Assembly (NCBI GenBank): GCA_044892505.1
Contig: CM097882.1
Location: 542,190,001-542,254,000, forward strand
Direction of reading: 5' to 3'
Origin: Schmidtea nova
Lineage: Eukaryota
DNA length: 64,000 nt
Part shown: positions 10,376 through 59,975 of the stretch, in pieces
How positions within the stretch are numbered: position 1 is the first letter of the stretch
Layout: each line of letters opens with the position of its first letter
Notes under the pieces: generated by a model
What the model was told of the DNA's origin: nothing
Seen by the model: only the letters and a program-made list of their open reading frames with translations
The model's database searches: none
Program-made: the position numbers and the translations under genes

Positions 10376-10419
10376 ATGTTTTTTGTTATTATTTGTTTGT
10401 TTGTTTGATCGTTGCTTTT

Positions 10420-13516: not shown

Positions 13517-13974
13517 AATATATTAATAATTGTTTATAAATAAGATAAATGGATTCTTGTTTTTCTGTTAAAATTTATTTTATTTTTTGTAAAAATAGTT
13601 TTTTAAGTAGCACAAAATTATCACTTCTAAACTTTAATAAAAAAAAGAAAATAATGTTTGCTAATACACACATAATAACTTTTTTAGTGAAAGAAATCTC
13701 AACGCCAACTTTGCAATGAAAATATTTAAATTTTAAATTTATTTGTTGTTTTTAAATATAGTGTCATCTATTAATTAGGTATCAATAAAATTAATTTTTT
13801 GATTCCTAATTAACAAACGGTTCTATAAACTACAAAAAAATTAACAACCAGTTCTATAGAACCGGTGCGAACCGGCTACAGCTCATCACTGTGTTTAGCC
13901 TATATCTATTTGTTCCTATGCTATAGTCTTCATCTAACTCAAATGTTTCTACTATTTTCCCTGTCTCTAACAAT

Positions 13975-15620: not shown

Positions 15621-15657
15621 ATGTTAAAAAATTCTTTGCGAACATTATATAAATTAG
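15621..15657 (+). CDS. NDUFS3: NDUFS3 exon 1 ([13 protein letters not shown])
   Basis: ATG at 15621 and phase-1 donor GTTAGC at 15658. The 51-bp intron ends TTTTAG at 15708. The frame joins exon 2. Confidence 0.75.
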
Positions 15658-18600
15658 GTTAGCGTGTTACGTAACGATCAATATATTATTTTAATTTTAT
15701 TCTTTTAGGAATTTTTAAAAATGTAGCATCGAAATATTGTGTTTCAACATTATCCACAAATTCACCTTCAGTTTCATCATTTTCTAATACACGTAAGATC
15801 TCGTTTTTATTATTTGAATGATTAATAACATAGATTTTTAATGATTATCATAATATATATTTCAACAACAATATTTTCAGCAACAATTCGTCCAACTGAT
15901 GAAGTAGCTAAGAGTTATTTATCTGATTTCGGATCATATGTAGGATCTTGTTTACCGAAATATGTGCAAAAAGTTCAAATTACCTCAACAGATGAGTTGG
16001 AAATATTGATTCATTACACGGGAGTTTTGCCAGTATTGACATTTCTCAAGGATAATCACCTTTCTCAATTTGGCTGTCTTGTTGACATTGCTGGCATAGA
16101 TGTGCTTTCTAGGCAATATCGATTCGAGGTTTGATTTTATTATTACTATTTTTATATTTTTTATTATAATTAATAATATTATTGCTGATATATTATTATT
16201 TATTATCATTATTTTATTACTTTATTTTTGTTTTTATTGTTATTAACCTTTATACCGTCTTTTTCAACCAAAATCCAGATTATTTTTTAAATAACTCTGA
16301 AATTATACTAATGACTCACCTAAAGTTTTTGACATGATTCAATTTACTAAAAATAAGCTTTGATCAAGAAGTTTGAGAAGCTGGTCTAGTCCGTCATGCT
16401 TCCACAAATAAATTTGAATGTAGAGAAGACTTTTACAAGGTAAGTAGCATTTTACTCATGTCGTTTGAAAAAATAAACGAGAACAGTACAAAAGCCTAAA
16501 TTGCAATTTTAGAATCGTCAACAACCACACCAATTAATTTATAAAAAATAGAACAAGAAAACAATCAACACAAGTGTTAACCTTGGAATTTCATCGAAGT
16601 AATGATTTGACAATACAAATTCTTCGTAGACACAAAGAAATAATACAAAGTAAAAAATAACTTGATGATTCAGACGCTTTGCATTTGTGATTATTTAAAA
16701 AAAAATTTACTCGAATCTTGCATTAGCAATACCTAGCACTGCCTCCAATTGTGATTCATTTTGCTCCCTATTTATAATTAATTTTAGAAAAAAAATTATT
16801 ATCATAAACATACTCACTACACTTAAAAAGTCACAAAGCCTTATAACATAAATAATTAATTTTAGGAAATTATTGCAATTTCATTTTCATTTCGGGTCCA
16901 ATGGACCCGGGCGGTAGACCGAGAGTTAAATAACTGTGTGTTTTGTGTTGTAAACTGTGTTTTTGATTAAATTATGTTTTTTGGAGAATATATTTCATTT
17001 TTTAAATTTTGGGTTCCTAAAATAAAAAAAGTTTTGTTTTCAATTTTGATTAAAAATTAAAATTTTGATTTTTTAAAAATTTAGTGTGTAAAGATATATT
17101 TTAAAAATTGAATTTTGATACAATTCGAGGATGATTATTATTGATTAATTTTTTTAAACTATTTCGTATTTCGTATTTTTTATTTATTATTGATTATCCG
17201 GGCTGCTAGTCTGCAGAACAATTATTCTATTTATACTGAAATTGTTTTCCCGTTTGCTAATTTGAGGGTTAACATTTTTATAATTTATCATTAAAAATGT
17301 GTTTTTATTCTACAACTTAATTTGTTACTTAAAAACAAATTTGCTCTTTCATGGCAATCAATTTCATTTGTAGGTAGTATATATACTTTTGTCTCTTCGA
17401 TTCAATAGTCGAATTAAAATAAAAACATATGCTGATGAGTTGACTCCGATCGATTCGGTTTATTCAGTATTTAAAGCAGCGAACTGGTTTGAAAGGGAAG
17501 TCTATGATTTATATGGAGTTTTCTTCAATGATCACCCTGATTTAAGAAGGATTCTAACTGATTACGGCTTTGAAGGTCATCCGTTCAGAAAAGATTTCCC
17601 TTTATCGGGCTATGTTGAGGTAATTAATTTACTTATTTCATATAACATAAACTACAGAAATGCCACAATCCCGTTATTATCCCATAATATCGAATCCGCC
17701 ATTTTCCTATTTTGAATATTGATTCATAAACTGAGTTCTCTTTTTTTAAACAAACAACTTTTTCAAATTTTAGTAATATTTAATTTTTAATGAAAAATGT
17801 TAGCTCAGAATTTTGTATTTCGTTTTTTTCAAAATAGTTCCTCTACAAAACATTTATTTTTGATATTCCTAATACAATAGACGTTCCTTTCCTTGTCAGA
17901 ACAAAAAGGTGATGCTTATTAGATACAAACATGTAACATTCTACTTTAACCCTCGCGTACCTGAATATAAAAAAATTATGTGCCTATGGTACATATATGT
18001 ACAACTCGGGGCGAAAGGGTTAAGAATGGAACAAATGAAATCGCCAATTCGATATCTTTTTGACAATTAATCAAAGATTGAATTTATAATAATTTTAACC
18101 AATCAACAACGGATTACTATCCAATCAAAATACAGATAATAAAATGAAAAGGAACAAGATAATATTACTTTCTTTGTCGAAAATCATCAATTTATTATTA
18201 ATTAAACTTTAAATTTGCTATAAAGGCTTATAATATTATTTATTTACAATTAAGTAAAGATTAAATTTATAATAATTTTAACCAATCAACAAAGGATTAC
18301 TATCCAATCAAAAGAATATTAATATTAAAGGCTTATAATATTATTTTTTTACAATTAAGTGAAGATTAAATTTATATTAATTTTAACCAATTTGCAACGG
18401 ATTACTATCCAATCAAAATTCAGGTAATAAAATGAAAAGGAACAGGATAATATTTTCTTTGTCGAAAATCATCAATTTATTGTTAATTAAACTTTAAATT
18501 TGCTATAAAGGCTTATAATATTATTTATTTACAATTAAGTGAAGATTAAATTTATAATAATTTTAACCAGTCAACAAGGGATTACTATCCAATCAAAATT

Positions 18601-21600
18601 CAGGTAATAAAATGAAAAGGAACAGGATAATATTATTTTCTTTGTCGAAAATCATCAATTTATTGTTATTTAAACTTTAAATTTGCTATAAAGCCTTATA
18701 ATATTATTTATCAACCTTTCGAATATTAAGATAAAAAATTTTCATATATTACCAAGATTGTTCTAATTGTAACACATAGAAGGAAACGATGTGTATGACT
18801 ATTAAAAGGTAATTAAAGTTGGAATGAGGTGTTAAAATTAATATTTATTTCGAAATTGTCTTTAAAAAATTTATCAAACATCTCTAAAAATAAATGCCGT
18901 TGCTGTTAGACGATCAGTTGATTTTGCTTTTCCAAAAATTTAGTATATAAACTTAGCTGTCTAAAGTGTGACTCAACTTACATAGGAGAAACACATAGAA
19001 CTTTTTGCACCTGACCTAATGAACACTAAAAATAAAACCAGTAATTATTACGAACACTGGGAGAAAGTACATAAAATGATCTCATTTATAGACGAATCAA
19101 AAAGTCAACTTTTACAAGACCGATTCAAAAATTCATTACAAAGATTAGCTTCTGAAACTTCTTTTATCAAAAAACAAATACCATCCATCAACATTCAATT
19201 CGCACAAAAATCATTTTTAAAAATTTTAATTAAATTAAAATAAAATTTATCCAATAAAATCATTTTAAACTAATAAAATAAATAATTAAATTTCCTACTT
19301 AAGATTAATTTAATATTACGATTGAAATACACATTTTATAACGGCTGTATCGAAATATCGTGTACCTAACAACCAAAAAAAATTTCATCTAGTCTTACAA
19401 ATTTAAATATGAAAATTATTGAATTTAATAAAAAAATATGTTACATTTAATTATTGATTACTGTGAATAAGTTTTTATACATAAAATGGATCCAATTGAG
19501 GAAAACGAAATATTAAGAGAAATATCAGATATTGATGAGTAGATTATCTCTGAAAGTGAGATAAAATACGATAAAAGTGACGGAGAATATGTAGAAGGAA
19601 AAAGAAATGATGAATAATGTCGCAAGAGATAGAATGACATTGAAAAAGAAACAAATTTTTACAGCACATCATAAATACTATAAAAGAAAGGAAAGGATCC
19701 GTATCTTGCGTAAATACATCAAGTATAAAATCAATATTTAATTATTTCATCGCTGATGACGTAATGAATTTGATAATTGAAGATGGGAATAGAAAAGTGC
19801 ATCATTAATAGAAAATCGATAAGCGATCGATAAGATAACACTAGTGGCATTAATTGAAAGTTTTTACCTACTCAAAATAGCAGGACATCAATTGTATCAC
19901 TTTGGAAACAAGATGATCCGTTTGATTTATTTATATTTACAGCATCTCTTTCAAAAAATCGTATGCAAGAAATATTAAGAGCAATAATATTTGAAAGAAC
20001 GAAGATAAATTAGCAGCAAATAAAGATGATTGTAATTTAGTCGTGGATAAATTTAAAAGTGAATATATTCCGAGATTAAATAAAAAAAGTTGTCTGAACT
20101 TAGATATAAATTTTACTGATGCCGATTTCGAAATAGTTTTGCTCACAATCTCAACAATTTTACCAGTAAAATTAGCAGTTGAGTCGCTATGTCGTGAAGA
20201 CGCCAACTTACTCTCCGCAGATGCTACATTTATATTTATGTTTGATGCTTTAAATGAAATTAAATAATCACTGAACGAAGAAATTGTAAGTGTAGTTTCC
20301 CTCATGTTTTGAAACCACAAACTCTCAATTCACTGTTGGTTGTTGTAAAATAAATGGGACTTTTGGATAAAAATCCAGTTCTAGAAGAGCACAATGAAAC
20401 CGAGTATTAAGCATAAAGTAATACACCTGAAAATTCACTGAAGAGGAAGTTGGACGAAGCAATTCTAAAACGAATAAATTATAAAGTTGTCGCCAAAAAA
20501 CTTGAACACGGCATCTGCTGAAGTGATTAAAAAAGAAATGAGAAAATTTTAAGATGAAGTTGTACAGAGAAAATATCTTCAGCAAGTTTAAGAATTACTA
20601 TTAGATTTCTTTGAATACCGGTATTAATACCTGTATTCCTGCATTGTTATTCCTTAATACCGGTATTGATTTTCCTTTCGGTTTTTGATTCCATAAAAAT
20701 AACAAATAGAGTGAAATATTGAGTTAGTAGTTGTTTTTATTGCGATCTTGACACAAGAAAACTTTCTAGATCAAAACGCGCTGTTTGCGAAAAGTTTAAA
20801 TGTCTCTCACTTTTTAAAATCTATTTTGTGTCTCGACTGTTCAACTTAAACTGTCAGTGAATAAGTAAAAAAAAGTTTTACCAGCCATTTTTTGTCTAAT
20901 TTTTCAACAATTTAAATTTTTTATTAACTTAATTTCATAAAATTAACATCATACTAAAACTCTGTAAACTCACTTTAACCCTTGTTTCGATTGTACTGAT
21001 TATTGATTCTTTAATTCTATATAAACATTCAATCTTATATTTATCATTTAGTAGTTTTATTACTAAGGCTACATTATCTCTGTTTCAATTGTCCTCATCG
21101 CTTTAAATCTTAAATAAATGCAATTTAATTAGTCATTACTATTAAACGAAACGAAACTTATAACACGTTAAAATTTGATCAATATTTGTATTTCAGAAAT
21201 TATGGTTTAAAGGCAAGACCAAAAAGATAATTTTGATCTATTTCTGAAGAAAAAATAAAATAGTTTAAATCAATAATTTTCATATTAAATTAAAATTTTT
21301 TGACTGTTAGGTACACAATGTTTCGACACAGTCTTTATCAAGTGTGTATTTAAATTGCATTTTTTCAAGGTTTAAAACGATGAGGAGAATTGAAGCCGGG
21401 ATAATGTAACCTTAATAATAAAACTAATAAAAGATAAGGGAATGATTGAATGTTTATATAGAATTAAATAATCAATAATCAGTAAAATCAAAACAAAGAT
21501 AAAAGTCTGTTTTTACCGTTTTAGTATGATGTTAATTTTCAGAAATTAAGTTACTAAATTAAATTATTTATAACATTTTTTTTGTAATCGATTTTTTTAC

Positions 21601-24600: not shown

Positions 24601-27600
24601 CGTATGAATTATCACAACTAGAAACTCCCTATCGATGCTTCAACTATTTTATTACAGATAGTAATAATGCAACACATTTTGGATGAAACAAATCTGTTTG
24701 CTATTCAAAAAATGCCGAAAGCCCAATTACTTGTTCTGAAAAAGATTTTTAAAAATTCTTGGGTATTTTGTATATGTCTGTACAAAATTTTCCTAGCACA
24801 AGGTTATATTGGTCTCCAAAATACGGATATAAACCAATCAGTTCAGTGATGTCAAACAATAGATTTGAAAAAATTAAATGTGTTTTACACATCAATAATA
24901 ATCAGCACAAGGCAGTAGGTGATCCTGGACACGATCGCTTATTCAAGATTCGACCTGTTATTCATCATCTAAACGAGAGATTTTCAACCATTCCCATGAA
25001 ACAAAGACTTTCCGTTGACGAACAAATGTGTGCTACAAAAGTAGCATACTATATCAAGCAATATTTGCCCAACAAACCTAACAAATGGGGATTCAAATTA
25101 TATGTTCTGTGCAATTTAGATGGCATTACTCATAAAATTGAAGTTTATGCTGGCCAAGATAATTAAAGCAGACCTGAAAATGAACCAGATATAGGAGCTA
25201 CTGGCAATGTCGCGTACTACTTAGCACCACAGGGAATTCAGTGTGTTGGTACTGTGCTGCAGAACAGAATTCCAAATTGTAAATTACCATACAAAAAGGA
25301 ATTCATGAAGAAAGCTATCCGAAGAGGGTCTTTTAATGAAAGAATGACATCACATCAAGGTATAGATATTGGATTGAACATGAGCTGGAAGCTAAAAAGA
25401 AGCGAGCGAAAATAGCAGTAGTACCTGGAAAAGACGTACGAAAAGATGGAGTAGAACATTGGCCAGAAATATGAAATTCACTTTAGTGTAAATTGCCTCT
25501 TTGTAAAGGATATTCGACAGTTCGATGTTCTAAATGTAAAGGTGATTTGTGCTTAAACAAAAACAATAATTGTTTTTATAAATTTTCATTCTGAATAATT
25601 TTTTCATTTATAATTATACAATATCTCATTACAAATCTGATTCTAGTTGACAGACCATACTCACATTATAATGGAAATTTACATCATACTATTTTTTCTT
25701 TTAAAAATATACTTTTTTTGACTTTGATTTTTTAAATTATATTTCCCTAAGACTTCACCTTAAAATACACCATAAAACATTGTTTTAATGCAATACAAAA
25801 AATCATGTATTTAAGGATTAAACATTTTAAAATAGAAATGTGATAACTTTTAAGAGATTTGAAGATAAGTGATTTATTAATTTCAATATAGAAGTCACTT
25901 CTACATGTCTTGGTACATAATTCATGTTTTTATATTAGTTTTTGTTTATTGATAATAATTATTAACTTGATGAAGTTTGTCACTTATTAATCAAAATATA
26001 TTAGTGCTTTAAAATTATTAGGATTTTCATCCTTTAAAACATTAGAATCAGTTTTACAACAATTTGAATCCATAACTTTTATTTCAGAAAAATATAATTA
26101 TCAAAATAATGTTTTCTTAATAATTTGTTATTTAAACAAATTTTCAAAAAATATTTATCTAATTAAAACTATTTTTATATTTTAAAAATCAATCTTAAAA
26201 TTAATTTTTAAAATTTTTCATTAAATATTTTTCATTGAAAATTTCTTAAATCTTCCAACTTCCTTATATCCCCCTTCTTAAGAAATTTTTAAGTTTTTCC
26301 ACATTTCTTTCAATCATTTTACCATTTTCATTTCTTAAGATGTATCGTCTGTCATGCACTTTCTCGATCACTTTCTATGGACCTTTATATCTGTCCTGGC
26401 TTTTATTGCGTGTTTCTAATTTTACTAGCACTTCTTCTTCTACATTGAATTTTCTCCTTGTTTGTTCTTCTAGTTCTTCCTTTACCGGTATTTCTTTGGA
26501 CCCGTACCATTTTCCCCTACTAATCTTTTTTTTTTTAAAACTATCTCTGCTGGGCTTTTTCCTATCGTTTTTTGTTTGGTTGCTTTTAATGTGAATTCGA
26601 CTTCTGGTAATATCTCTGTCCAATCCGTCTTCCTTCTATCCTGTAAAGTAGCATTTATCAGCTCCCGTATTGTCGAAAAACATATTTTAATATATAGAAT
26701 CTTTGTGAATTCTCTCATCATTCCTGATTCAAACGCCTTTCCGCAATCAACTCTTATCTCCTTTGGGCATCCAAATCTTAAAATCCACTTTTCTAAAATC
26801 GTTTTCTTTATTGTTTCTTCGTCTTTTTTTGTTATCGCTGTCAAGACTTGATACTTACTATACTGGTCTATTATACCCAATATATACTTCTTACGTCCTT
26901 TTGTTTCTTTCAACGGTCCACATATATCCACGAATATAATTTCGAACATTTCATTTGATTCTTGTTTCTTTACTGGTTCTTTCGTTGTTATTGTTATAGC
27001 CTTGGTTTTTTGACAAATCTCACAACTTCGAACAATTTCCTGAATCTGACTCCACAGGTGTTTTCCAACATATCTATCTTTCATATAATCGGCTATCTTC
27101 TCGACTCCCGCATGACACAATAGTCTATGTATTTCCTTTATTGTTTCTTGTAACTCATTTTCAGGTATCATCGTTTTCTTTCGTACTTCTTCTACAATTC
27201 AATGTTGGTCGTTGCTTCTTCCTTCTTCTCTGATCGAGTCTAGTAATCTGGTTTTTATCTTTCCTTTCTTAGCTTCTTCGTGGGCCATTTGACACTGAAC
27301 ACATGTGTCACATTTAGTGATTAATACATTTTCTGTATTCTACGCTTATATCTAAACTGCTCAAATAATTGATCCATGTTTGGAATTGTGAAGTAATCGG
27401 CTTCTTGGTTGTCATCATAAACGTGATTGCTTTGTGGTCTGTCCTGAGCGTGAATCTTCTTCCGTAGAGATAGTGCTTAAAATAAATGCAAAAATAATAT
27501 ACCGCCAATAGTTCCTTTCTTGTAATACAATATCCTTTCTCATGGCTCGTCATCGAGTCTGATCCATACGCAATTACTCTTTCCTTTCCATCTTTATCTC

Positions 27601-39600: not shown

Positions 39601-42600
39601 GTTAAGATTTAAAAATGTTAACGTTTTTAATAGTCAAACAATTAGTTTTTAAACAATAACTAATTGACTACTAATCAAATTAATTAGAATACTGGTCAAA
39701 TAAAATTAAATATTGGTCATAAAAAATAATTTGCTTTTCATTCTAATAAATTACTGATCAAGTGATACTGATCATTTTATTAAAAAACTGATCAAATTAA
39801 TAAAATACTGATATTTCATATTAAAAAATACTGATAATTTGTATTAAAATACTGATCATTAAAACCTAAGCCTTATTATTGGTATTTATAATATTCACGC
39901 TATCTATTGTTTTGTTGATTTCTTCGGTTGTTTTTATAGCGATTTCCTTGTGCCTCTAACACAACCTGTTAGTAAACATTTTTCAATTTATTCTTTCCGA
40001 TTATTGACTGCTAATCTTTCTGCCATTGTTTTTAGAATTTTTTATAAAGACTCCCACTTATCCATTCCATTATGTGTATTCCAAAATCTAAGTTAAGTTA
40101 TCTATCAGCGTCGTTGGCTTTTTGAAGGCTACTCTCAACTTTTGGTTTAATGTTTTCTCTTAAAGTTAAAAGTTTTCTCTTAGCTGCCTAAATTTCTTCT
40201 ATCAGATCACCGTCGATCATTGTATTTATGAGAGACGACTACATTTTAATTGGAATTTTTGCCATTTCTAAGAATCTTTGACTTTTCTGGTAAAGTCTCA
40301 AATATTTTTATTTGAAATCCCAACTTGGGGATGATTCTTAGATAATTAGTAAATAAGTCTTATTGAACAATAAATATTTTCTTTTTACAATGTACAAGTC
40401 TTCAGATAATCAAAAATCAGAATGTAACAAAATGCTCGATTTAACAAAAATGTCGATATTAATTTCTTAATAGATGCTGTCTTAAATTTCAATTAAAATA
40501 TGATAATAATCTTATTGGGTGCGTGTTGTGTTATCCGTACAAAAATTACGTGTAAATCAATTGTATGACTGATTTAGGTTTTAGAAATTGGTTTAAATTA
40601 CCTTAAACCAATTTATTATTTTTTTATCGTTATATTTTAGTGCAAAAATATTTTTTGTGTATTTTGTTATTTTTGGTGATTATATTTATCATAAATTTTT
40701 GTATGGGACATTCTTTAATTATATATTTTAATTTATTTCAACTATACACTTTTATTGTTATTAAATGTGTTTATTTGTTTATAATTGTCTTAAAATATAA
40801 TATTTTTAAAATTAAAGTGTTTTAAAATCCAAGCATGTTTTGATATATGTTGGTTTTATATTTCAGAAAACAACCTAAAATTAAAATAATCAATACTCAA
40901 ATTAAATTAGCACATGTTGAAATAAACAATTAAAATAATTTTTTTTTCAAATAAATTATTTTCATTTAAATATCATTATGAATCATAAATAATAACTCAG
41001 TTGATGAATTCTCAAAATCATATATCAGTTGAAATATACTTTCTTTACATAATAAAATACCATACGATAAAATAATAAATTGCTAAGTCAATGTTTTCAA
41101 GAAATCTGCCCGGGTTAGATATTGTTATGGATAATTAAATAATTTTCAGATTACTGGGTTGATTAGGCTTGAAAATTGATGTGAGGATTTGGGTTGTTTG
41201 ATAGTTGATGTTGGGCTTAAGTTGAATGAACTTGAGGGTCAGTGTGAGGATTTGAGATATTTGATGATTGTTGAATTGATTACGATGGGTGTCTAATCAT
41301 TTTTCTGAGTGTATATTTACTTTATATTTGTTCGACTCTGTCTTATAATATTTTGACAAGACGAATGTGTCGATAAGGTTACCTTCATCATCCAACATTC
41401 AGTTAATGAACTTTTCAATATTATATCTTACAAAATGTTGTCAGTACTAATCTCCCAACCAGTATATCCGTGGATCTGGTCGCAATGTTAGTTCCAATTT
41501 CTTCATTCATTGTACGTTGTTAATAATAAAATAAGTTCATGTTTAAATAAACTTATAATTTCTATGTTGTGATTATTCAAATTATTTTAATTTTCAAACA
41601 TTTTTAACATACTATACAAATATTTGCATTTAGAAATTATTTTAAAATTAAAATATTTATCAGACAAAATTTAATTTTAATTAACAAATTTAAATTTTTT
41701 TAAAATTCTCTAAAGTTTCTCACAAATTGTATACCCATATTTTGTTTCAACACTTATTTACAAGGTTTTTAATAATAAACACAATTCTCCATTTCATATC
41801 TCGATTTTTCATATTACTCTGACTCCATTTCAATATGGAAAATGTATCTTTTTTGCTCGAGATTTTTTGCAATGTTTTGTCCAGGAACATGTCAACAGTG
41901 TAAAAAAGGTTTGCGTTGTAATGAATGTGACCCATCATAAAATCGTAAACTTGCTTAAAACACTGAAAATTTTATATACTTATTTGATTTTTACAAATTT
42001 GTGCGGTTTCATCTTGTACTAAAAATATATAAATAAATAATGAAGTTAAAAAAGGTTGGAAACCCCTGACCTAGATTATTCTGCTCTTACCTGCATGATA
42101 AGTTTATTTCAAGTATAAATGTTATTCTGAATAAATATTTAGTGTAAAATAGTGTAATTATGGTTAATACTGAATTATTAAGAATTGCTGAATGCTGATA
42201 CCTGTAGATGGTCTGTGAAGTAAATAAAATACGATATATACAACATCAATAACAAAAAAACTATAAATTGCACCAGTTGCAAGCAAAGTCCTAGCCGGAC
42301 TCCTGTCATTTCTGAAACATCTAGTCCAGTGGAAAGCGCACTGGAAGCTGAGAATCTTAATGTATATTTTGTATATCCTTCGCCTGTAACGTTATAACTT
42401 TTGAATAAGTTTCTTTACCTGTCCAGGGCGAATCCACGTGCCTTTGAGTGGTGTCCGTGGTGTCACTTTCACTAGATTCTAAGTCCTTAATACACCGACT
42501 GAGAAAATATGTTATATAATAGCAAAACCAAACAAGCTCACAATTAACCACCCTTTTTAAAACTCTCAGTCATTGATCACAGTACAACCATATTTGACGA

Positions 42601-45314
42601 AAAGCGGGGTGGAAAGGTTGAATTATAGCAGTTAATTGTTATAATATTTAGTTACAAACATAATTTCATTAAAATTAAACTCTTACTGGACTTTGGAAAA
42701 TTATTTAAATCAAAAAAATAATATTTATGATAACTTTTACAAATATTAATTTAAAATAAATTAATGTGAAAATTAAGGTAATCCAAGTAATACAAACGAA
42801 AAACAAATAACTATTTCTTTTAGAATATAATTTTCATCCTAGATCTTATAAATTATTTTAATAGTTTCAAAATTATATACACTTTTAGAACTAAATATTC
42901 ATTTACCAAAATATTGATATCTTATATGTGAAAAATAACTAACTTTATTTTATCTTTCCAAAAAGTAAATATGCTGCGATCCATAAAAAATAAGTAATGG
43001 CAACGCATATTTATTCATTTTCTTGTATTCAGTTTTATATTGATTTCAATCCTCGGATTTCGCTTTGTATTTCAGCATCATTTTATTATTTCTTACTACT
43101 GGTGAATGAATTGGGATATCAAACCAATCATAAAACCGAATTCTCATCTCATCGTTTACTGCGTACGACATTAACATGACAAAAACATGTTACTGCTTGC
43201 CTGCGATAATACATCAATTGTTATTGAATATTTGATTTATTATTCCAATTTATAGTCGAATTCACCATTCTCTCATTGGAAATGAACCTAAATCCATTAA
43301 GACGACTAATATACACACTCAAACACATGTTGTATTTGTAAGGTTCGGAATTAAATGTCTTGCTGTATAAGTCAATGTTTCTTTTTTGTTAGGAGATAGA
43401 TTCTCAGTCATCCAATCAAATACCCCGCAAATTTCTGAATTTTCTTTCCATCTCAATTACTTTTTTGTCGAATTATTTATTTTCCCATCAATAATTTGTT
43501 TCAATGTAATTGTCTAATATGCGCCATTTACTTTTGCTCAAAAATGTCAACCTGCAAATAAATCACAAATTCACTTATTTCTATAATAAATCTATTTCAC
43601 TTCTTTATTCTAATGTCGCGGCTGGTGCTCATAATTTTTCAATTCATCAATTGGCTGTTGCGATTTTGTCTCAATCATCTTAATCCGTTGCTTTATCTAG
43701 TTTGCATCTATACATCAATAACAATAATTAATGATCAAACTTCATTGATTGATTTGATGTTTTTTTCCATATCTCTTCTCAGCAATGAGTTCTCATTCTT
43801 CATTTCTGTCGTGTTGTCTTTCTCTTAATTTTTTATCTCGAACATTTTTTTGTTAAAATCACAAATAATAATATAATATTTTAATAAATTTAATTCTTGA
43901 TTACAATGTCTGTTCTCTCTTCAATTCGACAATATCATTCATTGGTGATTCCATCTTTTGACGTAAATAGTTGCCCAGTACAATCAATAATTTGCTATTG
44001 AGTTCTCATTCTTCATTTTTGTCGTGTTGTCTTTCTCTTAATTTTTTATCTCGAACATTTTTTTGTTAAAATTACAAATAATAATCAAATATTTTAATAA
44101 ATTTAATTCTTGATTACAATGTCTGTTCTCTCTTCAATTCGACAATATCATTCATTGGTGATTCCATCTTTTGACGTAAATAGTTGCCCAGTACAATCAA
44201 TAATTTGCTATTGAGTTCTCATTCTTCATTTTTGTCGTGTTGTCTTTCTCTTAATTTTTTATCTCGAACATTTTTTTGTTAAAATCACAAATAAAAATCA
44301 AATATTTTAATAAATAAATTTACTTCTTGATTACAATGTCAGTTCTCTCTTCAATTCGACAATTTTATTCATCGGCGATTCCATGTCTTGACGTAAATAG
44401 TTGCCCAGATCAATCAATAATTTCCTATTGAGTTCTAATTCTTCATTTTTGTCGTGTTGTCTTTCTCTTACTTTTTCATCTCGCATATTTTTTGCTAAAA
44501 TCACAAATAATAATCAAATATTAATCAAATACTTCTTGATTGCATCGTCAGTTCTCTCTTCAATTCGATAATTTAATTCTTCGCCGATTCCATCCCTAGA
44601 CGTAAATTTTTGCTTAGATCAATCAATAATTTGCTATGGAGATAATTATTCTCATTGAGGGCATTTATCATTCCATTATTTATCACTTCATTCATTTCAC
44701 ATCCAATTTCATTGAATGAACCGTTGATCGGCTGTTTTTTGTCATGCGATCTTTTATATATTTGTAACTGGTCTTTAAATTCACAATTTATCTTAATATT
44801 TGATCATAATTTCTGAATTTTGAACGGAAGACCAATGGTAATATCTTTTGGATTTATCATTTTCCTTTGATAAATCTCTAAATAAATTCCTTTTGATGTT
44901 CCTAGACTGAACTTATCATATCTATTTAAATAATGCTCAATGCAATCATAGCAAAAGTGACATTCACAAAGACCATTGTAAGCTGTTATCATTAATTCCC
45001 CATGTTCCTAAAGAATTAAATCAAAGTAACTGAGTAAAAATATTTTTATATATTTTAAAAATTTTCACGAAATACTAAAATTCAGCCTGCGACCTACATT
45101 TTGAGAACCTTCGTAATTGATAATAAATGACAAATAAAATATTTATTAACTGTAATTTAGTTAATTAATATGATTTAAAAATTTATGAATATATGTGAAT
45201 AAACAAACCAATAGATTATGTACTAGAAATGAAATAAAATTCTTTAATTGGGCAATGTAGGCTTATAAATTTTTTAACATTTCGTTACACTTTGGTTATT
45301 ATAATTATCTTAGC

Positions 45315-45397
<83 letters not shown>

Positions 45398-48300
45398 AAA
45401 AGATATGTCGCCCAGTCATAAAACTCCTCCTCAACGGTGAAAAGTAGCAAAGTCACATTTGTATCAGTTAACCAATTTACACTCTTACTCGCTGATATTC
45501 GCAATAAAATGAACTGCTACCTACCCCAAAATCCAATCCTGGTTCTTAACTAATGTAATCAAATGCAACGCGCGGAAGCAGATTTTTGGTCACCTACGTC
45601 ACCTTTTCTAAAAAGTCCTTGAGGATATTTACTGCTTGCAGAAGATTGATTTGGAAAAGTTCTTTGTTGTTGATTGCAGTAATCATCCGTTGTACCAACA
45701 CTAACTTGTATTGGTGCTTTATGTTTTGAATGACTATCGCATCATAGGCTGAGTATGTGACGTGTTGTTTGGAGGTAGGAAGAACAGTGTAATGTTCACC
45801 AATCCCTCGTTCGTCGGATGAGCAACAGTTATTGAGGATTAAGGCAATCTTACGCTTGCCTGTAGCCATGTGTCATCTAGGAACGACTGTTTGCTTCAAA
45901 CATTAATGGGACATGTTCTCCTCCGAAGCATCGTGGTATTTGGGAATTTTCAATCACGATTAATGGTTATTTGTATCCCAATGCGCTTCATGGCATAGAA
46001 CTGTAATCCGCTCTTTTGAACGCTTTACTACACTGCATTTTGTGATTTTGAAATTATTAGTGTTATTTAGTAGGATGTACTAGAATATCTTATCAACGTT
46101 GAAAATATTACTAAGGCTGAGTACATACAATATTACTGGAAGGAGATTATTTCACCAGTCTCCATAACATAATTCGTTCATCAACAGCCGCTGCTTCGCC
46201 ATGGAGTTTTTTTGCAACAACAGAATGGCATATTTTCGAACGATTAATCCATTTTTTGTCTATCTTCGTGCTTAAACTACAGTTTTCTTGCGAACTCTTG
46301 GGGTAGATCTCCGCATATTCGAGGTCTACCGGCAGCACAGTTCTGCACCACTCAAGAAGAACTGTGTAATCTTCTCTAAGAAAAATGACTTGTTGCACAT
46401 AACTCTCGTGTTCATACCACTTATTGTGTCTTTAAGGCTGTGAGTGGAAATGGAGGGTAGAAACAGCATGGACTACGTATATAGAGGGCATCTAAAATAT
46501 ACTGCTTTGTATGCACGTTTTCCTAACAAAGGCCTTGCGCTAATAAGAGTTCTGTACTGAACAGAACGCATTGATAATGTATTTCGATGCTCACACGCCA
46601 ACTTAATCTTGCTAATAAGCTAATAATTTCATATTTGTGATTGAGAAGTTCTTGGTATAAAACAAATCTTGCTTTTATGCGACATTCTTTTAGACAACCT
46701 CAATTGTGCTTAACAACTTGATAATAGGTGAATTTTTCAATCTCCTTGAGAGTTTGAAAATAATATTGTGATATAAATTTTAGTTTAATTTAAATTGTTT
46801 ATGGATGTAATAAATACTAGGAGTTCTAAAAAGAATAGTAACTTTAAAATCAATTCTTCGATTCGAAATTTTTGTATTTTTTTAATTTTAATTACAATAA
46901 AATTTAAACGTACGCATATGTTATCATTATAATTTCCGATCTTTTTTTCCACTTTTGATCTTGTAATAATTTCTTTTTCTTACAACTCAGATTTTTATCA
47001 TTTTATTTTTTACTGATGAAAATTTGATCCGTTTTCTGAAAAAAACGAAAACTCAGAAGTACATGTCAATAATCCTGAATACGTTAATTTATATTTAATG
47101 TTTTCTTTTTTCGTCATTTTTCTGAGGATAAATACGATTTGATGGAATTATTTTAATACATTTATCACCACGGGGTTCTTAGGTATCCCTGTCGATAATG
47201 CTAGAATCTTTTCTTGCCTTGAAAGTATTTAAGTCAATTATTTTAATTTAGTTTTCTAGCTTAACCTCTTACGCGGTTTGATGCATTGTTTGAAGCATAT
47301 ATTCGTCATATCCATTCTATTCATCTTTTTATGAATATGTTTTACATTTTGCACAATATTTGTTGACAAAAATGAAATCTTATCTTTATTATTTTAGTTT
47401 ATATTTATAACAGCTTATAAAAAACTGAAATAAAAGTTACAAAAAGGAGGGAGAAGTTATAGGATTGTAATTATATTTATATTTTTTGTGAAACAAATTA
47501 GATAACATAGAATTTGTTCTTTTGTATAATAAATTTTAAAACACGGAACTGAATACAATCCTGTTTTATACTCTTCGCACCAATACCTCGCATTCACTCG
47601 ATTTAATTTTTTTGATGACACACATGACAGTGTTTCGTTGGTTTAGCATTTTGCCGTTGATGGTAAAAACAAAGGGAAATGTCTTTCACCAAGTCTAGAT
47701 GGTTTCGGCGTTATTGAGATCTTCTTGTAGATGAAAATTCAAAAAGATTTTTAGTAAATTACGTTTCTTAATATAAATTAAAAATACGACACCTAAACAA
47801 TTTGCAGTTTGCAATGCGTACATCCTTTTTCTATTACTAGGATCGATTTCGCGTATATATTCGACATAATCATTAAGAATACAAAGCAAATTCATGATGC
47901 GAGTATATTCGTCATAAACACTGCAATACATTAGACCAGACCTGCACAACATACAGTCCGCTGGCCGCATTCTTAAATTCACATTAAATTTGAAATAATG
48001 TAAAAAAAGCGAATTAATGTAAGTATAAATGTTACTAATAAAAAAATTTTCTTTTTATTTCTTTTCGGCCCTCAACTATTTTCTTTGAAATTATTAACAA
48101 GTTTCTAATGTGTTTAATTTTTGTAATTCAATCGATTCGTGTGGAGCCCATTTCTGAATCTTTTTGACCATTGTAATTGTCTTTAAATTGTTATGAACGG
48201 CTGTTTTTGAGAAAGACAGGTTTATAGCAAGTTTTCGAACAGATCTTGTGAAAATTTGAGCAACAGCTTCACGTAAATCTTCCTCCGACAGCTTGATATC

Positions 48301-50456
48301 AGGTCTACTGCGAGCAGGGATACCATCTTCGAGATTTAAATATGCGAGACAAAATCTCGAAATTGAAATAAAGAAAAAACACATAATTTGAATATTTCAA
48401 ATATTCAATGTATATATATTATTATAATATTTATTATAGTCACAAATAATGAAAAAATAAAATAAAAAAAAATTATAAAAAACTAAATAATAAAAAAATA
48501 TATGCTTAATGAAAAATTAACAAATTAACAAAACATAACGAAACAGAAAAAAGGAATACAACCATAAAATATAAACTTAAAAATGAGATCAAAAATTCAA
48601 AAACAATAAAAGTAAAAAAAATTAAGATTAATTTATAAATATCAATGGTATTTATCTTTAGATTTTATTTCTTTTACAATTGAATCATCCTCTTTCAAAA
48701 ATTTTTGAAATTGTATGCAGTTCATTCCAAAATTTTGTTTCACCATTAATTCCGCTTCTAAATTTTCCAATAATAAACGATTTCTTTCTTTCCGCCAAGC
48801 ATTAGTCATAAGGCTAAAAATCCTTTCAGGTATAGCATTAGAATGCGGAATAGAAAATATTACTTGCACAATTTTAGTAATATTTGGAACATTATACTTC
48901 TTATAAAATATTACCCATTTTTCTTCAATAGAAAATTCTTTTTCTGTATTACTTAATTCGCGAATAAACTTTTTCAAATAAACATATTCCTCATACAGCA
49001 AATCTTCATTGATATAAATTCTATAAGCTGCAACAATATCTTTGATCTCTTGAAATTCGGGAATGGACCGTAAATTTAAGTGATATAGTATTTTTAATTT
49101 ATTGTCGTTAAAATCAAACCATTTATCAATATACTTTTTAGCAGCATCAAAAAAATTGTTGGCATCTATTTTAAATCGTTTTTTAATACTTTCATTATCA
49201 CAATTATGAAGGATTTTAATTGCAATAGATCCATAAAAATTATCATTTTTTCTTGCTATTAACGATTGCCTTATGGAATCCATTATTGTGTAAATATCTA
49301 AAATCAATAATTCGTTCCCTTGAAGTTTTTTGAGTGCCGGTTGAAAGATTGAACACGCATTCATTACAAATCCAAGATAAGCCTCAGCTAGCTCGTCGTC
49401 AAAAAACATTCGTTTACAAGTTGAAACACTATTTTTGCTCATAAAATACGACTTGATTGGTTTGAAATTTAATAGCAACCTCTCGATAGCTGGTAAAAGT
49501 GTTAACCATCTTGTGGGAATATGCTTCAACATCTCGCACCACTCGGTTTGAGTCCATACAAAGTTTGCGTGTGGGACGCGAGAAATATCTTAGGTGTGTG
49601 GGACAATCCCACCTAGGGCGGTACAGATGGTAACCCTGACTGCGAGGCATATTTTCGAGATCAATTTCTCCGTCATTAAATCATTTAAACCAACGCCTAA
49701 TAGTTCTTTCATTAACTGTATCGCTCCCAAAAGCATTATTAATATTCCTCTCCGCCTCAACTGAATTGTTATTCGATTTCCACTCATATAAATAAAGAAG
49801 TCTCAAATCATGATTTTCTAACTTGTACATTTATATTTGAAAATGAAATTTATAGTAATGAAATTATTATAAATCTTACTTAATATTCGAATATGAAATA
49901 AGCGTTTTCTAATGAACTTTAAAATAAAGAAATACGTGTATATAAAAAAAGTTATCATGATTTAAAGTTATTATAAATTATTCGGACATTTCATTCCGGA
50001 CAACCTAATAATAAAAATTTTAATTCTTTTGCTTAAATCACATGCAGTCGTTTCGGCAGTCAACTATTTTCTTTGAAATTTTCGGTCCTCGACGCTTCTG
50101 AAGTTGTGCAGGCTTAAAGGGATAAAATTTATTGATTTTTTGTTAATTCCAGGTCTTTTTGAAGGCAAATATTAACGTGATTGTGAATTTATTTGTGGCG
50201 ATTTGTATTTTATTTATTATAACTGTATTTTTTGAACTAATGTAAATTTTGCTTTTTGCAGTATCGTTACGACGACACGTTGAAAAGAGTAGTTATTGAG
50301 CCGTTAGAACTTGCTCAGGAATTCAGAAAATTTGAATTTAATTCGTCATGGGAAAATTTTCCTCAATTTAGAGATCTAGAGAAAAATAAAAATCACATTA
50401 TTGATTCGACATCTATTGAAAAACCGAAGGAAATCGAAGACAAAAAACCTGAATAG
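15621..50456 (+). CDS. NDUFS3: NADH:ubiquinone oxidoreductase core subunit S3 (complex I 30 kDa, NuoC family); spliced gene, 5 exons, 269 aa
   Basis: join(15621-15657,15709-15792,15881-16128,17374-17619,50262-50456) = 810 nt. All four introns are GT..AG and the frame is preserved. The product has an N-terminal presequence-like segment, then [18 protein letters not shown]|[63 protein letters not shown]|[24 protein letters not shown], recognisably collinear with animal NDUFS3. Confidence 0.95.
15709..15792 (+). CDS. NDUFS3: NDUFS3 exon 2 (Ser/Thr-rich targeting peptide part)
   Basis: Open between the acceptor (15708) and donor GTAAGA (15793). Phase 1 joins exon 3 to give P-T-I-R-P. Confidence 0.8.
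15881..16128 (+). CDS. NDUFS3: NDUFS3 exon 3
   Basis: Acceptor TTTTCAG at 15880, conserved sequence TIRP..RFE, donor GTTTGA at 16129. Confidence 0.95.
16247..16925. mobile_element. Possible TTAA-flanked MITE in NDUFS3 intron 3
   Basis: TTAA at 16243-46 and 16926-29. The ends (CCTTTATACCG vs rc CTCTCGGTCTACCG) match only imperfectly. Confidence 0.4.
17374..17619 (+). CDS. NDUFS3: NDUFS3 exon 4
   Basis: Acceptor TTTGTAG at 17373, complex I 30-kDa signature [22 protein letters not shown], phase-0 donor GTAATT at 17620. Confidence 0.97.
17950..18019. mobile_element. 70-bp piggyBac-like mini-element
   Basis: TTAA-CCCT...AGGG-TTAA (TTAA at 17946-49 and 18020-23). Confidence 0.6.
18070..18710. 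repeat. About 180-bp tandem array, roughly 3.5 units with one internally deleted
   Basis: aattttaacca recurs at 18091, 18274, 18379 and 18559 (spacings 183, 105, 180). Confidence 0.9.
18930..19375 (+). mobile_element. Second Penelope-like GIY-YIG remnant
   Basis: [28 protein letters not shown], then a frameshift into [23 protein letters not shown] (ORF 19019-19243). Confidence 0.75.
19860..20660 (+). pseudogene. Degraded hAT-type transposase fragment
   Basis: [23 protein letters not shown] resembles hAT catalytic-region sequence. Palindromic AATACCGGTATT motifs at about 20614 and 20655 look subterminal. Confidence 0.55.
20905..21570. repeat. Inverted repeat, arms about 225 bp (20905-21130 / 21350-21570), spacer about 220 bp
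   Basis: rc of the left arm matches the right arm at an estimated 80-85% by eye (gttttagtatgatgttaatttt; gattgaatgtttatatagaattaaa). Confidence 0.88.
23227..25817 (+). mobile_element. Degraded piggyBac element, 2591 bp
   Basis: TTAA TSD (23223-26, 25818-21) and TIR CCCTTAAATGCAT with 2 mismatches. Transposase fragments at 24444-25166 ([22 protein letters not shown]) and a C-terminal Cys-rich domain at about 25486-25600. Confidence 0.9.
24005..24394 (+). pseudogene. Ty3/gypsy gag N-terminal fragment inside the piggyBac
   Basis: [29 protein letters not shown] aligns with [15 protein letters not shown] of the gag at 30023-30286. It has two in-frame stops. Confidence 0.7.
26016..26268 (-). repeat. 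3' LTR (253 bp), termini TAT...ATA
   Basis: Direct repeat of 30286-30525 with about 6 substitutions and a 13-bp indel. It is preceded on the minus strand by PPT AAGAAGGGGGA (26269-26279). Confidence 0.93.
30273..30285 (-). promoter_or_regulatory. Primer-binding site complementary to tRNA-Leu 3' end
   Basis: TGGTGGCAGCGGT is complementary to ACCGCTGCCA-CCA, the 3' end of animal tRNA-Leu(AAG/TAG) as recalled from vertebrate sequences. Confidence 0.85.
30286..30525 (-). repeat. 5' LTR (240 bp), termini TAT...ATA
   Basis: Direct repeat of the 3' LTR, abutting the PBS. Confidence 0.93.
31750..32600 (+). pseudogene. Heavily degraded Ty3/gypsy RT/RNase H remnant
   Basis: [17 protein letters not shown] and [11 protein letters not shown] match the RNase H of 27314-27724. 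Confidence 0.75.
33106..35800 (+). mobile_element. Degraded Ty3/gypsy element: putative 5' LTR, tRNA-Ser PBS, gag, protease, RT remnants
   Basis: TGTAA..TTACT (33106-33263) is followed by TGGCGTCACGAGCAGGAT (33264-33281), complementary to a tRNA-Ser 3' end. Protease-like [11 protein letters not shown] at about 34165; [21 protein letters not shown] at about 35130-35205. Confidence 0.75.
35900..36520 (-). pseudogene. Degraded gag remnant next to LTR-like copy D
   Basis: Purine-rich, stop-riddled sequence resembling the gag at 29400-29950. Confidence 0.5.
36640..38390 (-). repeat. LTR-like long dispersed repeat, copy D (approximate)
   Basis: rc contains aagcttacctgctcactg, gtataaatagg (TATA-like), gacaataaatatt (polyA-like) and taggcatacaaacccg, all matching copies A/B/C. 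Confidence 0.65.
38411..39873 (-). mobile_element. Foldback Mutator-like element with degraded SWIM-containing transposase
   Basis: Arms are rich in TGATCAGTATT (left) and AATACTGATCA (right). Termini are AGGC..GCCT, flanked by TATTATT on both sides. The interior encodes [41 protein letters not shown], homologous to 1830-2010. Confidence 0.75.
39900..40330 (-). pseudogene. Degraded gag N-terminal remnant
   Basis: [13 protein letters not shown] resembles [12 protein letters not shown] of the 30286 gag. Confidence 0.5.
43015..45007 (-). pseudogene. TRAF-family pseudogene (RING, zinc-finger remnant, coiled coil, MATH/TRAF-C)
   Basis: Acceptor TCTTTAG at 45008, then [27 protein letters not shown] (RING-like). 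Coiled-coil exon(s) follow, with GT-AG introns at 44495-44532 and 43552-43600. A MATH-like stretch reads [33 protein letters not shown]. Multiple stops and frameshifts. Confidence 0.78.
43787..44640. repeat. 213-217 bp tandem repeat, 4 copies
   Basis: gagttct recurs at 43787, 44000, 44213 and 44430. Confidence 0.93.
45317..45394. repeat. (TA)39 microsatellite
   Basis: Direct inspection. Confidence 0.98.
45530..46420 (-). pseudogene. Degraded Tigger/pogo (CENP-B HTH plus DDE_1) transposase
   Basis: 46147-46398 ([25 protein letters not shown]) and 45594-45869 ([33 protein letters not shown]). Confidence 0.8.
48094..48384 (-). pseudogene. Mariner transposase N-terminal fragment
   Basis: [34 protein letters not shown] is a variant of the mariner WVPHEL region. 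Confidence 0.8.
48642..49790 (-). pseudogene. hAT transposase C-terminal part with dimerization domain
   Basis: 296-aa ORF with [14 protein letters not shown] and [22 protein letters not shown]. Frameshifted upstream catalytic remnants lie at 49590-49787. Confidence 0.88.
50262..50456 (+). CDS. NDUFS3: NDUFS3 exon 5 (terminal)
   Basis: Branch-point-like ACTAAT at 50236 and acceptor TTTTTGCAG ending 50261. Phase 0; encodes [38 protein letters not shown]-stop, the conserved NDUFS3 C-terminus. Confidence 0.93.
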
Positions 50457-50521: not shown

Positions 50522-50527
50522 AATAAA
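50522..50527 (+). terminator. Candidate polyadenylation signal of NDUFS3
   Basis: AATAAA about 65 nt after the stop codon. The motif is common in AT-rich DNA, so support is positional only. Confidence 0.45.
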
Positions 50528-59734: not shown

Positions 59735-59975
59735 TAATTTGTTTTGTTTGTGTTTTTTCGTGGTTCCTTCTTGCTCTTGTTCAATTTAAATTTTGCTATT
59801 GTTTTAATTCATTTTTCCTGTGCTTCTAATATTTTTGTTTATTTGGTGTTTGCTCAAATATTTTAGTATACTTCTTGCGTGGTCGCTACATGCTATATCC
59901 GCGCTCGCTTCTGAATTAATGGGATTTAGTTTTTGCCCAACATTATTGTAAACTTTTAATTTTTAGATTGTCACA
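59735..59975 (-). repeat. LTR-like repeat 5' fragment (copy F), begins TGTGAC
   Basis: rc aligns closely with 85-310 (tgttgggcaaaaact; aaacaccaa.taaacaaaa; attagaagcacaggaaaaa). Confidence 0.8.

What the first reader, a model, noticed from the sequence alone, without database searches (positions are those of the whole stretch)
17620..50261. NDUFS3 last exon is separated by a 32.6-kb transposon-filled intron
Seen: exon 4 ends GYVE|GT at 17619, and the missing conserved C-terminus ([13 protein letters not shown]) appears only at 50262, behind a branch point and CAG, in the same phase. The intron is 32,642 bp, about 94% of the coding span, while introns 1-2 are 51 and 88 bp. It holds more than a dozen TE remnants in both orientations, including LTRs with poly(A)-like signals, plus a nested pseudogene. 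Known: NDUFS3 is a core, highly expressed complex I subunit. Inference: the host must splice over a roughly 600-fold range of intron sizes and avoid premature polyadenylation, possibly by recursive splicing or exon definition.
Basis: partly seen in the sequence, partly recalled or inferred. Interest (0 to 1): 0.8.

Follow-up and report, generated by a model that had tools for sequence, protein, structure and literature searches.

The report
Transposon-bloated last intron of NDUFS3
The last intron of this insect-like complex I gene (NDUFS3) is 59-257 bases long in relatives but 32.6 kb here, at least partly through transposon insertions; the structure looks real, but it is a well-known kind of event.

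Summary
The core observation holds. Exon 4 (17374-17619) ends GYVE|GT. The only sequence in the window that encodes the missing NDUFS3 C-terminus starts at 50262, behind a CTAAT branch-like site, a pyrimidine tract and CAG, in phase 0. Against Drosophila NDUFS3, exons 3, 4 and 5 match residues 48-129, 130-211 and 213-250, so they abut. The five exons add up to 810 nt (269 codons plus stop). Six contigs from relatives carry a GT-AG intron at exactly this codon boundary, 59-257 bp long. The intron is therefore ancestral and is 127-550 times larger here. About a third of it is identifiable repeat: a Ty3/Gypsy-type LTR element with LTRs 2.5% diverged, piggyBac, hAT and pogo-like fragments, a TIR element and two tandem arrays. 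"More than a dozen TEs" and the "nested pseudogene" were not confirmed. The mechanistic ideas have no sequence support. The intron has no ratchet-type AG|GTAAGT site, no depletion of AATAAA on the sense strand, and no complementarity between its ends. The likeliest mechanism is ordinary single-step splicing of a long intron. TE-expanded introns in housekeeping genes are well documented, for example on the Drosophila ananassae F element. No transcript evidence could be reached. Interest is low.

The parts
15621..15657 (+). NDUFS3 exon 1 (ATG at 15621; start of the presumed mitochondrial presequence)
   Evidence: Read. It is followed by GT, and the reading frame closes with the later exons (810 nt in all). 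Homology does not support it, because presequences vary.
15658..15708 (+). Intron 1, 51 bp, GT..AG
   Evidence: Read.
15709..15792 (+). NDUFS3 exon 2
   Evidence: Read; unique in the window.
15793..15880 (+). Intron 2, 88 bp, GTAAG..CAG
   Evidence: Read.
15881..16128 (+). NDUFS3 exon 3
   Evidence: Codons 15883-16128 match residues 48-129 of Drosophila NDUFS3 chain 8esw_S3, E = 9e-29.
16129..17373 (+). Intron 3, 1,245 bp, GT..AG
   Evidence: An intron sits at the same boundary in L001 (2,743 bp), L006 (321 bp) and L008 (204 bp). It is absent in L004 and L005.
17374..17619 (+). NDUFS3 exon 4, ends GYVE
   Evidence: Pfam PF00329, E = 1.3e-33, profile positions 42-123 of 124. Matches residues 130-211 of 8esw_S3.
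17620..50261 (+). Intron 4, 32,642 bp, phase 0, GTAATT..TTTTTGCAG
   Evidence: The same codon boundary carries a 59-257 bp intron in six contigs from relatives.
50262..50456 (+). NDUFS3 exon 5, coding part with stop codon (YRYDD...)
   Evidence: Matches residues 213-250 of 8esw_S3, E about 2e-12. All 23 columns that are invariant in the relatives are kept. It is the only such sequence in the window.
50522..50527 (+). AATAAA hexamer 66 nt after the stop codon; likely poly(A) signal of the gene
   Evidence: Read. This is an inference.
18053..18711 (.). Tandem array inside intron 4 (periods about 105/180/285 bp)
20920..21558 (.). Pair of 212-nt inverted repeats, 84% complementary, 215 nt apart (MITE-like)
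24753..25412 (+). piggyBac-type transposase fragment (sense strand): truncated at both ends of the domain and interrupted at least once
   Evidence: PF13843 DDE_Tnp_1_7, E = 1.2e-27, plus a weak second piece.
26016..30524 (-). Ty3/Gypsy-type LTR retrotransposon, antisense to the gene. LTRs are about 250 bp and 2.5% diverged, with one 14-bp indel.
   Evidence: LTR pair. A tRNA-primer-binding-like site and a polypurine tract sit next to the inner LTR edges, and a possible 5-bp target duplication is present (read).
26485..30367 (-). gag-pol of that element (zinc knuckle, RT, RNase H, integrase). Broken into at least eight stop-free pieces, so at least seven interruptions: at least four of them in-frame stop codons, plus one to three changes of frame.
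   Evidence: PF00098, PF00078, PF17917/PF17919, PF17921 and PF00665.
38422..39860 (-). TIR element with subterminal 20-21 bp repeats in inverted orientation and a weak FLYWCH-like zinc-finger hit inside
   Evidence: PF04500, E = 5.6e-4, is below the Pfam cut-off.
43786..44641 (.). Tandem array, 213 bp x 4, 91% matches
45420..46719 (-). G+C-richer island with a weak pogo/Tigger-type DDE_1 hit; decayed transposase, tentative
   Evidence: PF03184, E = 0.0013, is below the cut-off. GC island.
48645..49589 (-). hAT transposase C-terminal part (dimerisation domain). The N-terminal part is not recognisable. It ends about 670 bp upstream of the exon 5 acceptor.
   Evidence: PF05699, E = 3.4e-10.

Best explanation
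This is one intact nuclear NDUFS3 (complex I 30-kDa subunit) gene of an AT-rich, insect-like genome.

Its last intron is an ancestral phase-0 U2-type intron between the codons for GYVE and xRYDD. In relatives it is 59-257 bp long. Here it has grown to 32.6 kb, at least partly through successive insertions of DNA transposons and an LTR retrotransposon plus the growth of tandem arrays. The gene sits in a window that is transposon-rich on both sides.

The intron is most likely removed as any long insect intron is. The donor at 17620 and the acceptor at 50261 are recognised by exon definition. Exon 4 is defined across its 246 nt. The terminal exon is defined by its branch site, pyrimidine tract and CAG together with the nearby poly(A) signal. 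The two are then joined co-transcriptionally in a single step.

Shown: the exon boundaries, collinearity with orthologues, the conserved intron position, the intact and constrained exon 5, the identified transposon content and the absence of ratchet-type sites. Inferred: that the intron is actually spliced, that the unidentified two thirds also arrived by insertion, and that splicing takes one step.
For: - Exons 3, 4 and 5 match residues 48-129, 130-211 and 213-250 of Drosophila NDUFS3.
- Exon 4 hits PF00329 at E = 1.3e-33.
- Exon lengths are 37+84+248+246+195 = 810 nt, so the frame stays open to the stop.
- Each exon occurs only once in the window, and the window has no N.
- Six contigs from relatives have GYVE|GT...AG|xRYDD with introns of 65, 59, 257, 164, 164 and 164 bp.
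- Exon 5 keeps all 23 columns that are invariant in the relatives, and the window-specific changes in exon 4 are conservative. The transposon genes around them are broken or truncated.
- The LTR pair is 2.5% diverged, with primer-binding-like and polypurine sites, which indicates a genuine and fairly recent insertion.
- The intron has no AG|GTAAGT-type site.
[quoted passage not shown] Long exon-defined introns are spliced fast and accurately in flies (PMC5762160).
Against: - No transcript evidence for the 17619/50262 junction could be reached. The species itself was not found among fragment proteins (best identity 68-75%), and the joined-exon search was left out.
- Only about one third of the intron could be assigned to repeats. 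The rest is anonymous AT-rich DNA.
- Contiguity rests on the assembly alone.
- A second, compact NDUFS3 copy elsewhere in the genome cannot be excluded from one window.
- Exon 4 carries eight residues that differ where all five relatives agree. This may be lineage divergence or slightly relaxed constraint.
Confidence: 0.8

Rival explanations
1. The intron is real but is removed stepwise by recursive splicing at internal ratchet points.
For: In Drosophila, recursive sites occur in most introns longer than 40 kb (PMC6110457). At 32.6 kb this intron approaches that size class.
Against: [quoted passage not shown] On the sense strand of the intron, AGGTAAGT and YAGGTRAGT occur 0 times. AGGTAA occurs 7 times against 6.8 +/- 2.4 in shuffles, and none of those has at least 70% pyrimidines in the 19 nt upstream. 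The host's own donors are weak (GTTAGC, GTAAGA, GTTTGA, GTAATT), so a cryptic weak site cannot be excluded.
Confidence: 0.1
2. Assembly artefact: exon 5 and exons 1-4 are not really 32.6 kb apart. This could be a chimeric join through repeats, or a haplotype-specific or collapsed repeat region.
For: The interval is repeat-rich, and such regions are the ones most often misassembled. No read-level data are available here.
Against: The window has no N runs. No long near-identical repeats in it could mediate a false join; the only pair above 95% identity is the LTR pair of a single element. No second copy of any exon exists. Order, strand and phase are exactly those of the orthologous genes.
Confidence: 0.07
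3. This locus is a duplicate on its way to becoming a pseudogene, its last intron swamped by transposons. A compact NDUFS3 copy elsewhere does the work.
For: Exon 4 has eight window-specific substitutions at positions where five relatives agree. The locus lies in transposon-rich, gene-poor DNA.
Against: All five exons are open and all splice sites are canonical. The window-specific substitutions are conservative. Exon 5 keeps every invariant position. The neighbouring transposon genes, by contrast, are broken or truncated.
Confidence: 0.07
4. The two parts are separate transcription units joined by trans-splicing, or exon 4 is normally joined to an unrecognised closer terminal exon that gives a different C-terminus.
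For: None from the sequence. It is merely not excluded without RNA data.
Against: Same strand, same order, canonical cis signals and a conserved cis intron in the relatives. The C-terminal 38 residues are conserved from insects to mammals, so a protein lacking them is unlikely to function. Read-through of the donor adds 31 codons and then stops.
Confidence: 0.02

Closest known systems
Transposon-expanded introns of genes in heterochromatin-like domains, e.g. Drosophila ananassae Muller F-element genes (PMC5555453)
   Same: Housekeeping genes, including a complex I subunit gene (ND-49), keep tiny introns beside a subset of introns enlarged by tens of kb of LTR, LINE and DNA transposon insertions. 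The median gain there is +32.5 kb per gene, and here it is about +32.4 kb in one intron. Coding exons are unchanged.
   Different: The organism here is unknown. The chromatin state and recombination context cannot be seen. Only about one third of the intron could be assigned to repeats without a repeat library for this genome.
Recursively spliced long introns of Drosophila (PMC6110457, PMC8605326)
   Same: A long intron (tens of kb) in an insect-like gene whose other introns are very short.
   Different: The defining juxtaposed acceptor/donor (AG|GTAAGT-like) site is absent from this intron. Known recursive introns lie mostly in developmental genes and are mostly longer than 40 kb.
NDUFS3 / ND-30 / NuoC family (Pfam PF00329; PDB 8esw_S3, 8b9z_C, 5xtb_P and others)
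   Same: Exons 3-5 are collinear with the whole mature protein. Exon 4 is about 74-80% identical to arthropod-like relatives.
   Different: Nothing unusual in the protein. Only the gene structure differs, in the length of intron 4.
Antisense bias of LTR elements in introns (PMC1794541, human ERVs)
   Same: The only LTR element here is antisense to the gene, and five of the six protein-bearing transposon remnants are antisense.
   Different: With six elements the bias is not significant (one-sided binomial about 0.11). That study concerns human introns.

Membership tests
NDUFS3 / Complex1_30kDa (PF00329) | Pfam domain match above the gathering score | tested here: met
   Exon 4: 116.7 bits against a cut-off of 22.5, profile positions 42-123 of 124. 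Exon 3 covers profile positions 5-39 weakly.
NDUFS3 / Complex1_30kDa (PF00329) | Collinear, gap-free coverage of a solved orthologue by consecutive exons | tested here: met
   Residues 48-129, 130-211 and 213-250 of 8esw_S3. The first residue of exon 5 takes position 212.
NDUFS3 / Complex1_30kDa (PF00329) | Open reading frame across all joined exons | tested here: met
Checked by arithmetic and exon-by-exon translation only: 810 nt, each exon stop-free in its phase.
U2-type spliceosomal intron (intron 4) | GT..AG termini, branch-like site and pyrimidine tract | tested here: met
   GTAATT at 17620. CTAAT at -25..-21, a T-rich tract and CAG before 50262.
U2-type spliceosomal intron (intron 4) | Intron at the same position and phase in relatives | tested here: met
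   L004, L005, L006, L007, L008 and L009 all read GYVE|GT..AG|xRYDD, with introns of 59-257 bp.
U2-type spliceosomal intron (intron 4) | Spliced junction seen in transcripts of this species | not testable with these tools
   No transcript data. Fragment searches did not find this species.
Recursively spliced intron (ratchet points) | Internal juxtaposed 3'/5' splice-site motif around AG|GT with an upstream pyrimidine tract | tested here: not met
   The intron has 0 strong motifs. Weak AGGTAA occurs at the chance level, and none lies behind a pyrimidine tract.
Recursively spliced intron (ratchet points) | Sawtooth nascent-RNA profile or recursive junction and lariat reads | not testable with these tools
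   No RNA data.
Transposon-expanded intron in a repeat-rich domain | Identifiable transposon insertions account for the added length | tested here: inconclusive
   Roughly 11 of 32.6 kb could be assigned to repeats. The rest is unclassified without a repeat library of this genome.
Transposon-expanded intron in a repeat-rich domain | Flanking DNA also repeat-rich and gene-poor | tested here: met
   The only family hits outside the gene are transposon domains (RT, integrase, GIY-YIG, hAT). Neighbour genes of the relatives' loci are absent from the window.
Ty3/Gypsy-type LTR retrotransposon (26016-30524) | Two LTRs flanking gag, RT, RNase H and integrase in that order | tested here: met
   LTR pair. 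Domain order on the minus strand.
Ty3/Gypsy-type LTR retrotransposon (26016-30524) | Target-site duplication | tested here: inconclusive
   A 5-bp match at the outer edges is possible. However, the LTR ends are not sharply defined, and the flanks are AT-rich.

The most novel reading that the evidence does not exclude
Exons 1-4 and exon 5 are no longer processed as one cis transcript. After the transposon invasion the C-terminal exon would be supplied from its own transcription unit and joined by trans-splicing. Nothing in the sequence suggests this; it is only not excluded without RNA data.
Probability: 0.02. Interest if true: 0.7.

Novelty: new member of a known kind. Interest (0 to 1): 0.2.

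Why it matters
If the junction is confirmed, the locus is a clean natural example of an essential, highly expressed respiratory-chain gene that tolerates a 127-550-fold expansion of one ancestral short intron, apparently without ratchet sites. That makes it mildly useful as a test case for splicing accuracy and premature termination in transposon-laden introns, and for gene prediction. An annotator that caps intron length would truncate this protein at GYVE. It does not open a new question, because the same pattern is documented genome-wide in Drosophila heterochromatin-like domains.

Tried and rejected
- Second copy or closer terminal exon: tblastn of each exon against the whole window found only self-hits.
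- ncRNA or tRNA genes nested in the intron: none.
- Nested pseudogene: 40 stop-free segments were scanned against Pfam, 39 inside the intron and one in a hAT element downstream of exon 5. Only transposon domains or sub-threshold noise came back.
- Source record through an exact look-up of the intronic hAT ORF: not on record.
- Fragments from this species or a very close relative that might span the junction: word searches with exons 3 and 5 gave 11 and 6 hits, at most 68-75% identical.
- Synteny: neighbour genes of the relatives' loci (MFS transporter, HEAT-repeat, GT4, RPL3 and others) give no hit in the window.
- Complementarity between the two ends of the intron that could loop it out: only 11-18 nt matches of the kind expected by chance in AT-rich DNA.
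- Relatedness of the intronic and downstream hAT remnants: none.
- P0010's contig could not be read because the file was too large.

Full report
**What is there.** The window is AT-rich (about 28% G+C) and has no N runs. Reading the + strand gives a five-exon gene.

| Feature | Coordinates | Size and notes |
|---|---|---|
| Exon 1 | 15621-15657 | ATG at 15621 |
| Intron 1 | 15658-15708 | 51 bp |
| Exon 2 | 15709-15792 | |
| Intron 2 | 15793-15880 | 88 bp |
| Exon 3 | 15881-16128 | |
| Intron 3 | 16129-17373 | 1,245 bp |
| Exon 4 | 17374-17619 | ends GYVE |
| Intron 4 | 17620-50261 | 32,642 bp, GTAATT...CAG, phase 0 |
| Exon 5 | 50262-50456 | starts YRYDD; TAG stop at 50454-50456 |

An AATAAA lies 66 nt after the stop. 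The exon lengths sum to 810 nt, which is 269 codons plus the stop. Intron 4 is 93.7% of the ATG-to-stop span and 640 times the length of intron 1.

**Is it NDUFS3, and do the pieces belong together?**
- Exon 4 matches Pfam PF00329 (Complex1_30kDa) at E = 1.3e-33.
- Against solved structures, exon 3 matches residues 48-129 of Drosophila NDUFS3 (8esw_S3), exon 4 matches 130-211, and exon 5 matches 213-250 starting from its second residue. The three exons therefore abut without gap or overlap in the orthologue.
- Exon 3 scores best against the Drosophila chains, so the genome is probably an arthropod's.
- A tblastn of each exon against the whole window finds only the exon itself. The next best hit for exon 5 has E = 0.38. 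No closer alternative C-terminal exon exists, and no remains of a second gene copy.
- Reading through the exon 4 donor adds 31 codons and then stops.

**Relatives.** Word searches were made exon by exon, by reference, and returned only exon-sized ORFs from metagenome and read-archive contigs, at most 68-75% identical. The species itself is not among them. Their contigs were informative all the same. Six loci (L004-L009, at least four different organisms) carry a GT..AG intron at exactly the same codon boundary, GYVE | xRYDD.

| Locus | Orthologous intron (bp) |
|---|---|
| L004 | 65 |
| L005 | 59 |
| L006 | 257 |
| L007 | 164 |
| L008 | 164 |
| L009 | 164 |

The intron is thus ancestral and normally short. 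Here it is 127-550 times longer. Intron 3 is less conserved: it is present in L001, L006 and L008 and absent in L004 and L005. Exon 5 of the window keeps all 23 columns that are invariant in the five relatives aligned. Exon 4 keeps 55 invariant columns, and its eight window-specific changes are conservative. By contrast, the transposon genes that surround exon 5 are broken or truncated. I infer from this that exon 5 is still under selection, and so is still used.

**What fills the intron.** The following were identified.
- A piggyBac-type transposase fragment on the sense strand.
- A Ty3/Gypsy-type LTR element at 26016-30524 on the antisense strand. Its LTRs are about 250 bp and differ by 6 substitutions in 238 aligned positions (2.5%) plus one 14-bp indel. 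A primer-binding-like site and a polypurine tract sit at the inner LTR edges. Its gag-pol is split into at least eight stop-free pieces, with at least four in-frame stops and one to three changes of frame.
- A TIR element with subterminal repeats and a weak FLYWCH-like hit, at 38422-39860.
- A weak pogo-like DDE_1 island at 45.4-46.7 kb.
- The C-terminal part of a hAT transposase at 48645-49589.
- A MITE-like inverted-repeat pair at 20920-21558.
- Two tandem arrays, at 18053-18711 and 43786-44641.

Together these cover roughly 11 kb, one third of the intron. The rest is anonymous AT-rich DNA that I cannot classify without this genome's repeat library. Five of the six protein-bearing remnants are antisense to the gene, which is suggestive but not significant. 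I did not confirm "more than a dozen" remnants or a nested pseudogene. No Rfam family and no tRNA is present. The flanks of the gene are also transposon remains, and none of the genes that neighbour NDUFS3 in the relatives' compact loci is in the window. The gene therefore sits in repeat-rich, gene-poor DNA.

**Mechanism.**
- Recursive sites are juxtaposed acceptor and donor motifs around AG/GT, and in flies they occur in most introns above 40 kb (PMC6110457). In this intron AGGTAAGT and YAGGTRAGT are absent. AGGTAA occurs 7 times on the sense strand, against 6.8 +/- 2.4 in dinucleotide shuffles and 8 times on the antisense strand. None of them follows a pyrimidine-rich tract.
- AATAAA is more frequent than expected on the sense strand (113 against 70 +/- 8, and 83 on the antisense strand). 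The hexamer alone cannot be a sufficient signal in this genome, and it shows no sign of purging.
- The two ends of the intron share no meaningful complementarity.

The best-supported reading is ordinary one-step, co-transcriptional removal with exon-defined splice sites. In Drosophila, long exon-defined introns are spliced fast and accurately beside 60-70 nt introns (PMC5762160).

**Comparison with what is known.** The pattern is tiny introns kept, one intron inflated by tens of kb of transposons, and coding exons untouched. Exactly this is described for genes in heterochromatin-like domains. [quoted passage not shown] The antisense position of the LTR element fits the known antisense bias of intronic LTR elements (PMC1794541, human data). 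This is a new instance of a known kind, not a new mechanism.

**Limits and rivals.** No transcript of this species could be reached, so the junction itself is inferred. Misassembly (0.07) is made unlikely by the lack of N runs, by the lack of long near-identical repeats other than the LTR pair of one element, and by the perfect order, strand and phase. A decaying duplicate with a working copy elsewhere (0.07) cannot be excluded from one window. Recursive splicing (0.1) lacks its defining motif. Trans-splicing or another terminal exon (0.02) has no support.

- The large representative-protein search and the third word search were not used.
- No contig looked human.

Noticed in passing
window 26016-30524: A Ty3/Gypsy-type LTR element whose LTRs are only 2.5% diverged. 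It is probably the youngest insertion in the intron, so the intron may still be growing, and the insertion could be polymorphic in the population.
   Followed up: partly
window 51992-53896 (+): A nearly full-length hAT-type transposase just downstream of the gene (Spin-doc/BED-like zinc finger plus hAT dimerisation domain), interrupted once. It is unrelated to the intronic hAT remnant. Inverted repeats follow at 53996-54167 / 54553-54768.
   Followed up: partly
window 506-971, 13972-14337, 62863-63274: Three copies of an unclassified repeat of about 300-400 bp, 78-80% identical, all outside the gene. A further inverted pair lies at 107-309 / 59745-59945.
   Followed up: no
window 6842-11349: Upstream of the gene there are decayed retroelement remains on both strands (weak RT and integrase hits on +, an integrase zinc-binding domain on -) and a GIY-YIG-like ORF at 6842-7204 (-) just below the Pfam cut-off. 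The last could be Penelope-like.
   Followed up: no
window 2787-3824 (-): Two long stop-free segments (201 and 111 aa) with no Pfam hit. By eye they look transposase-like, but they remain unclassified.
   Followed up: no
window 17620-50261, sense strand: AATAAA occurs 113 times against 70 +/- 8 in dinucleotide shuffles, and 83 times on the antisense strand. This is an excess rather than the depletion expected if the hexamer alone triggered premature polyadenylation.
   Followed up: partly
L004, L005 against L001, L006, L008 and the window: The intron between exons 3 and 4 (after RFE) is present in some relatives (204-2,743 bp) and absent in others. The intron after GYVE is present in all six loci that cover it.
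   Followed up: partly
L005 (Logan SRR19334605 contig, 8.8 kb, 29% G+C): A relative with a very compact locus: about nine recognisable genes in 8.8 kb, with NDUFS3 reduced to two exons and a 59-bp intron. This contrasts sharply with the window, where one gene occupies 35 kb.
   Followed up: no
window 45317-45394: A perfect (TA)39 microsatellite inside the intron, next to the pogo-like island.
   Followed up: no
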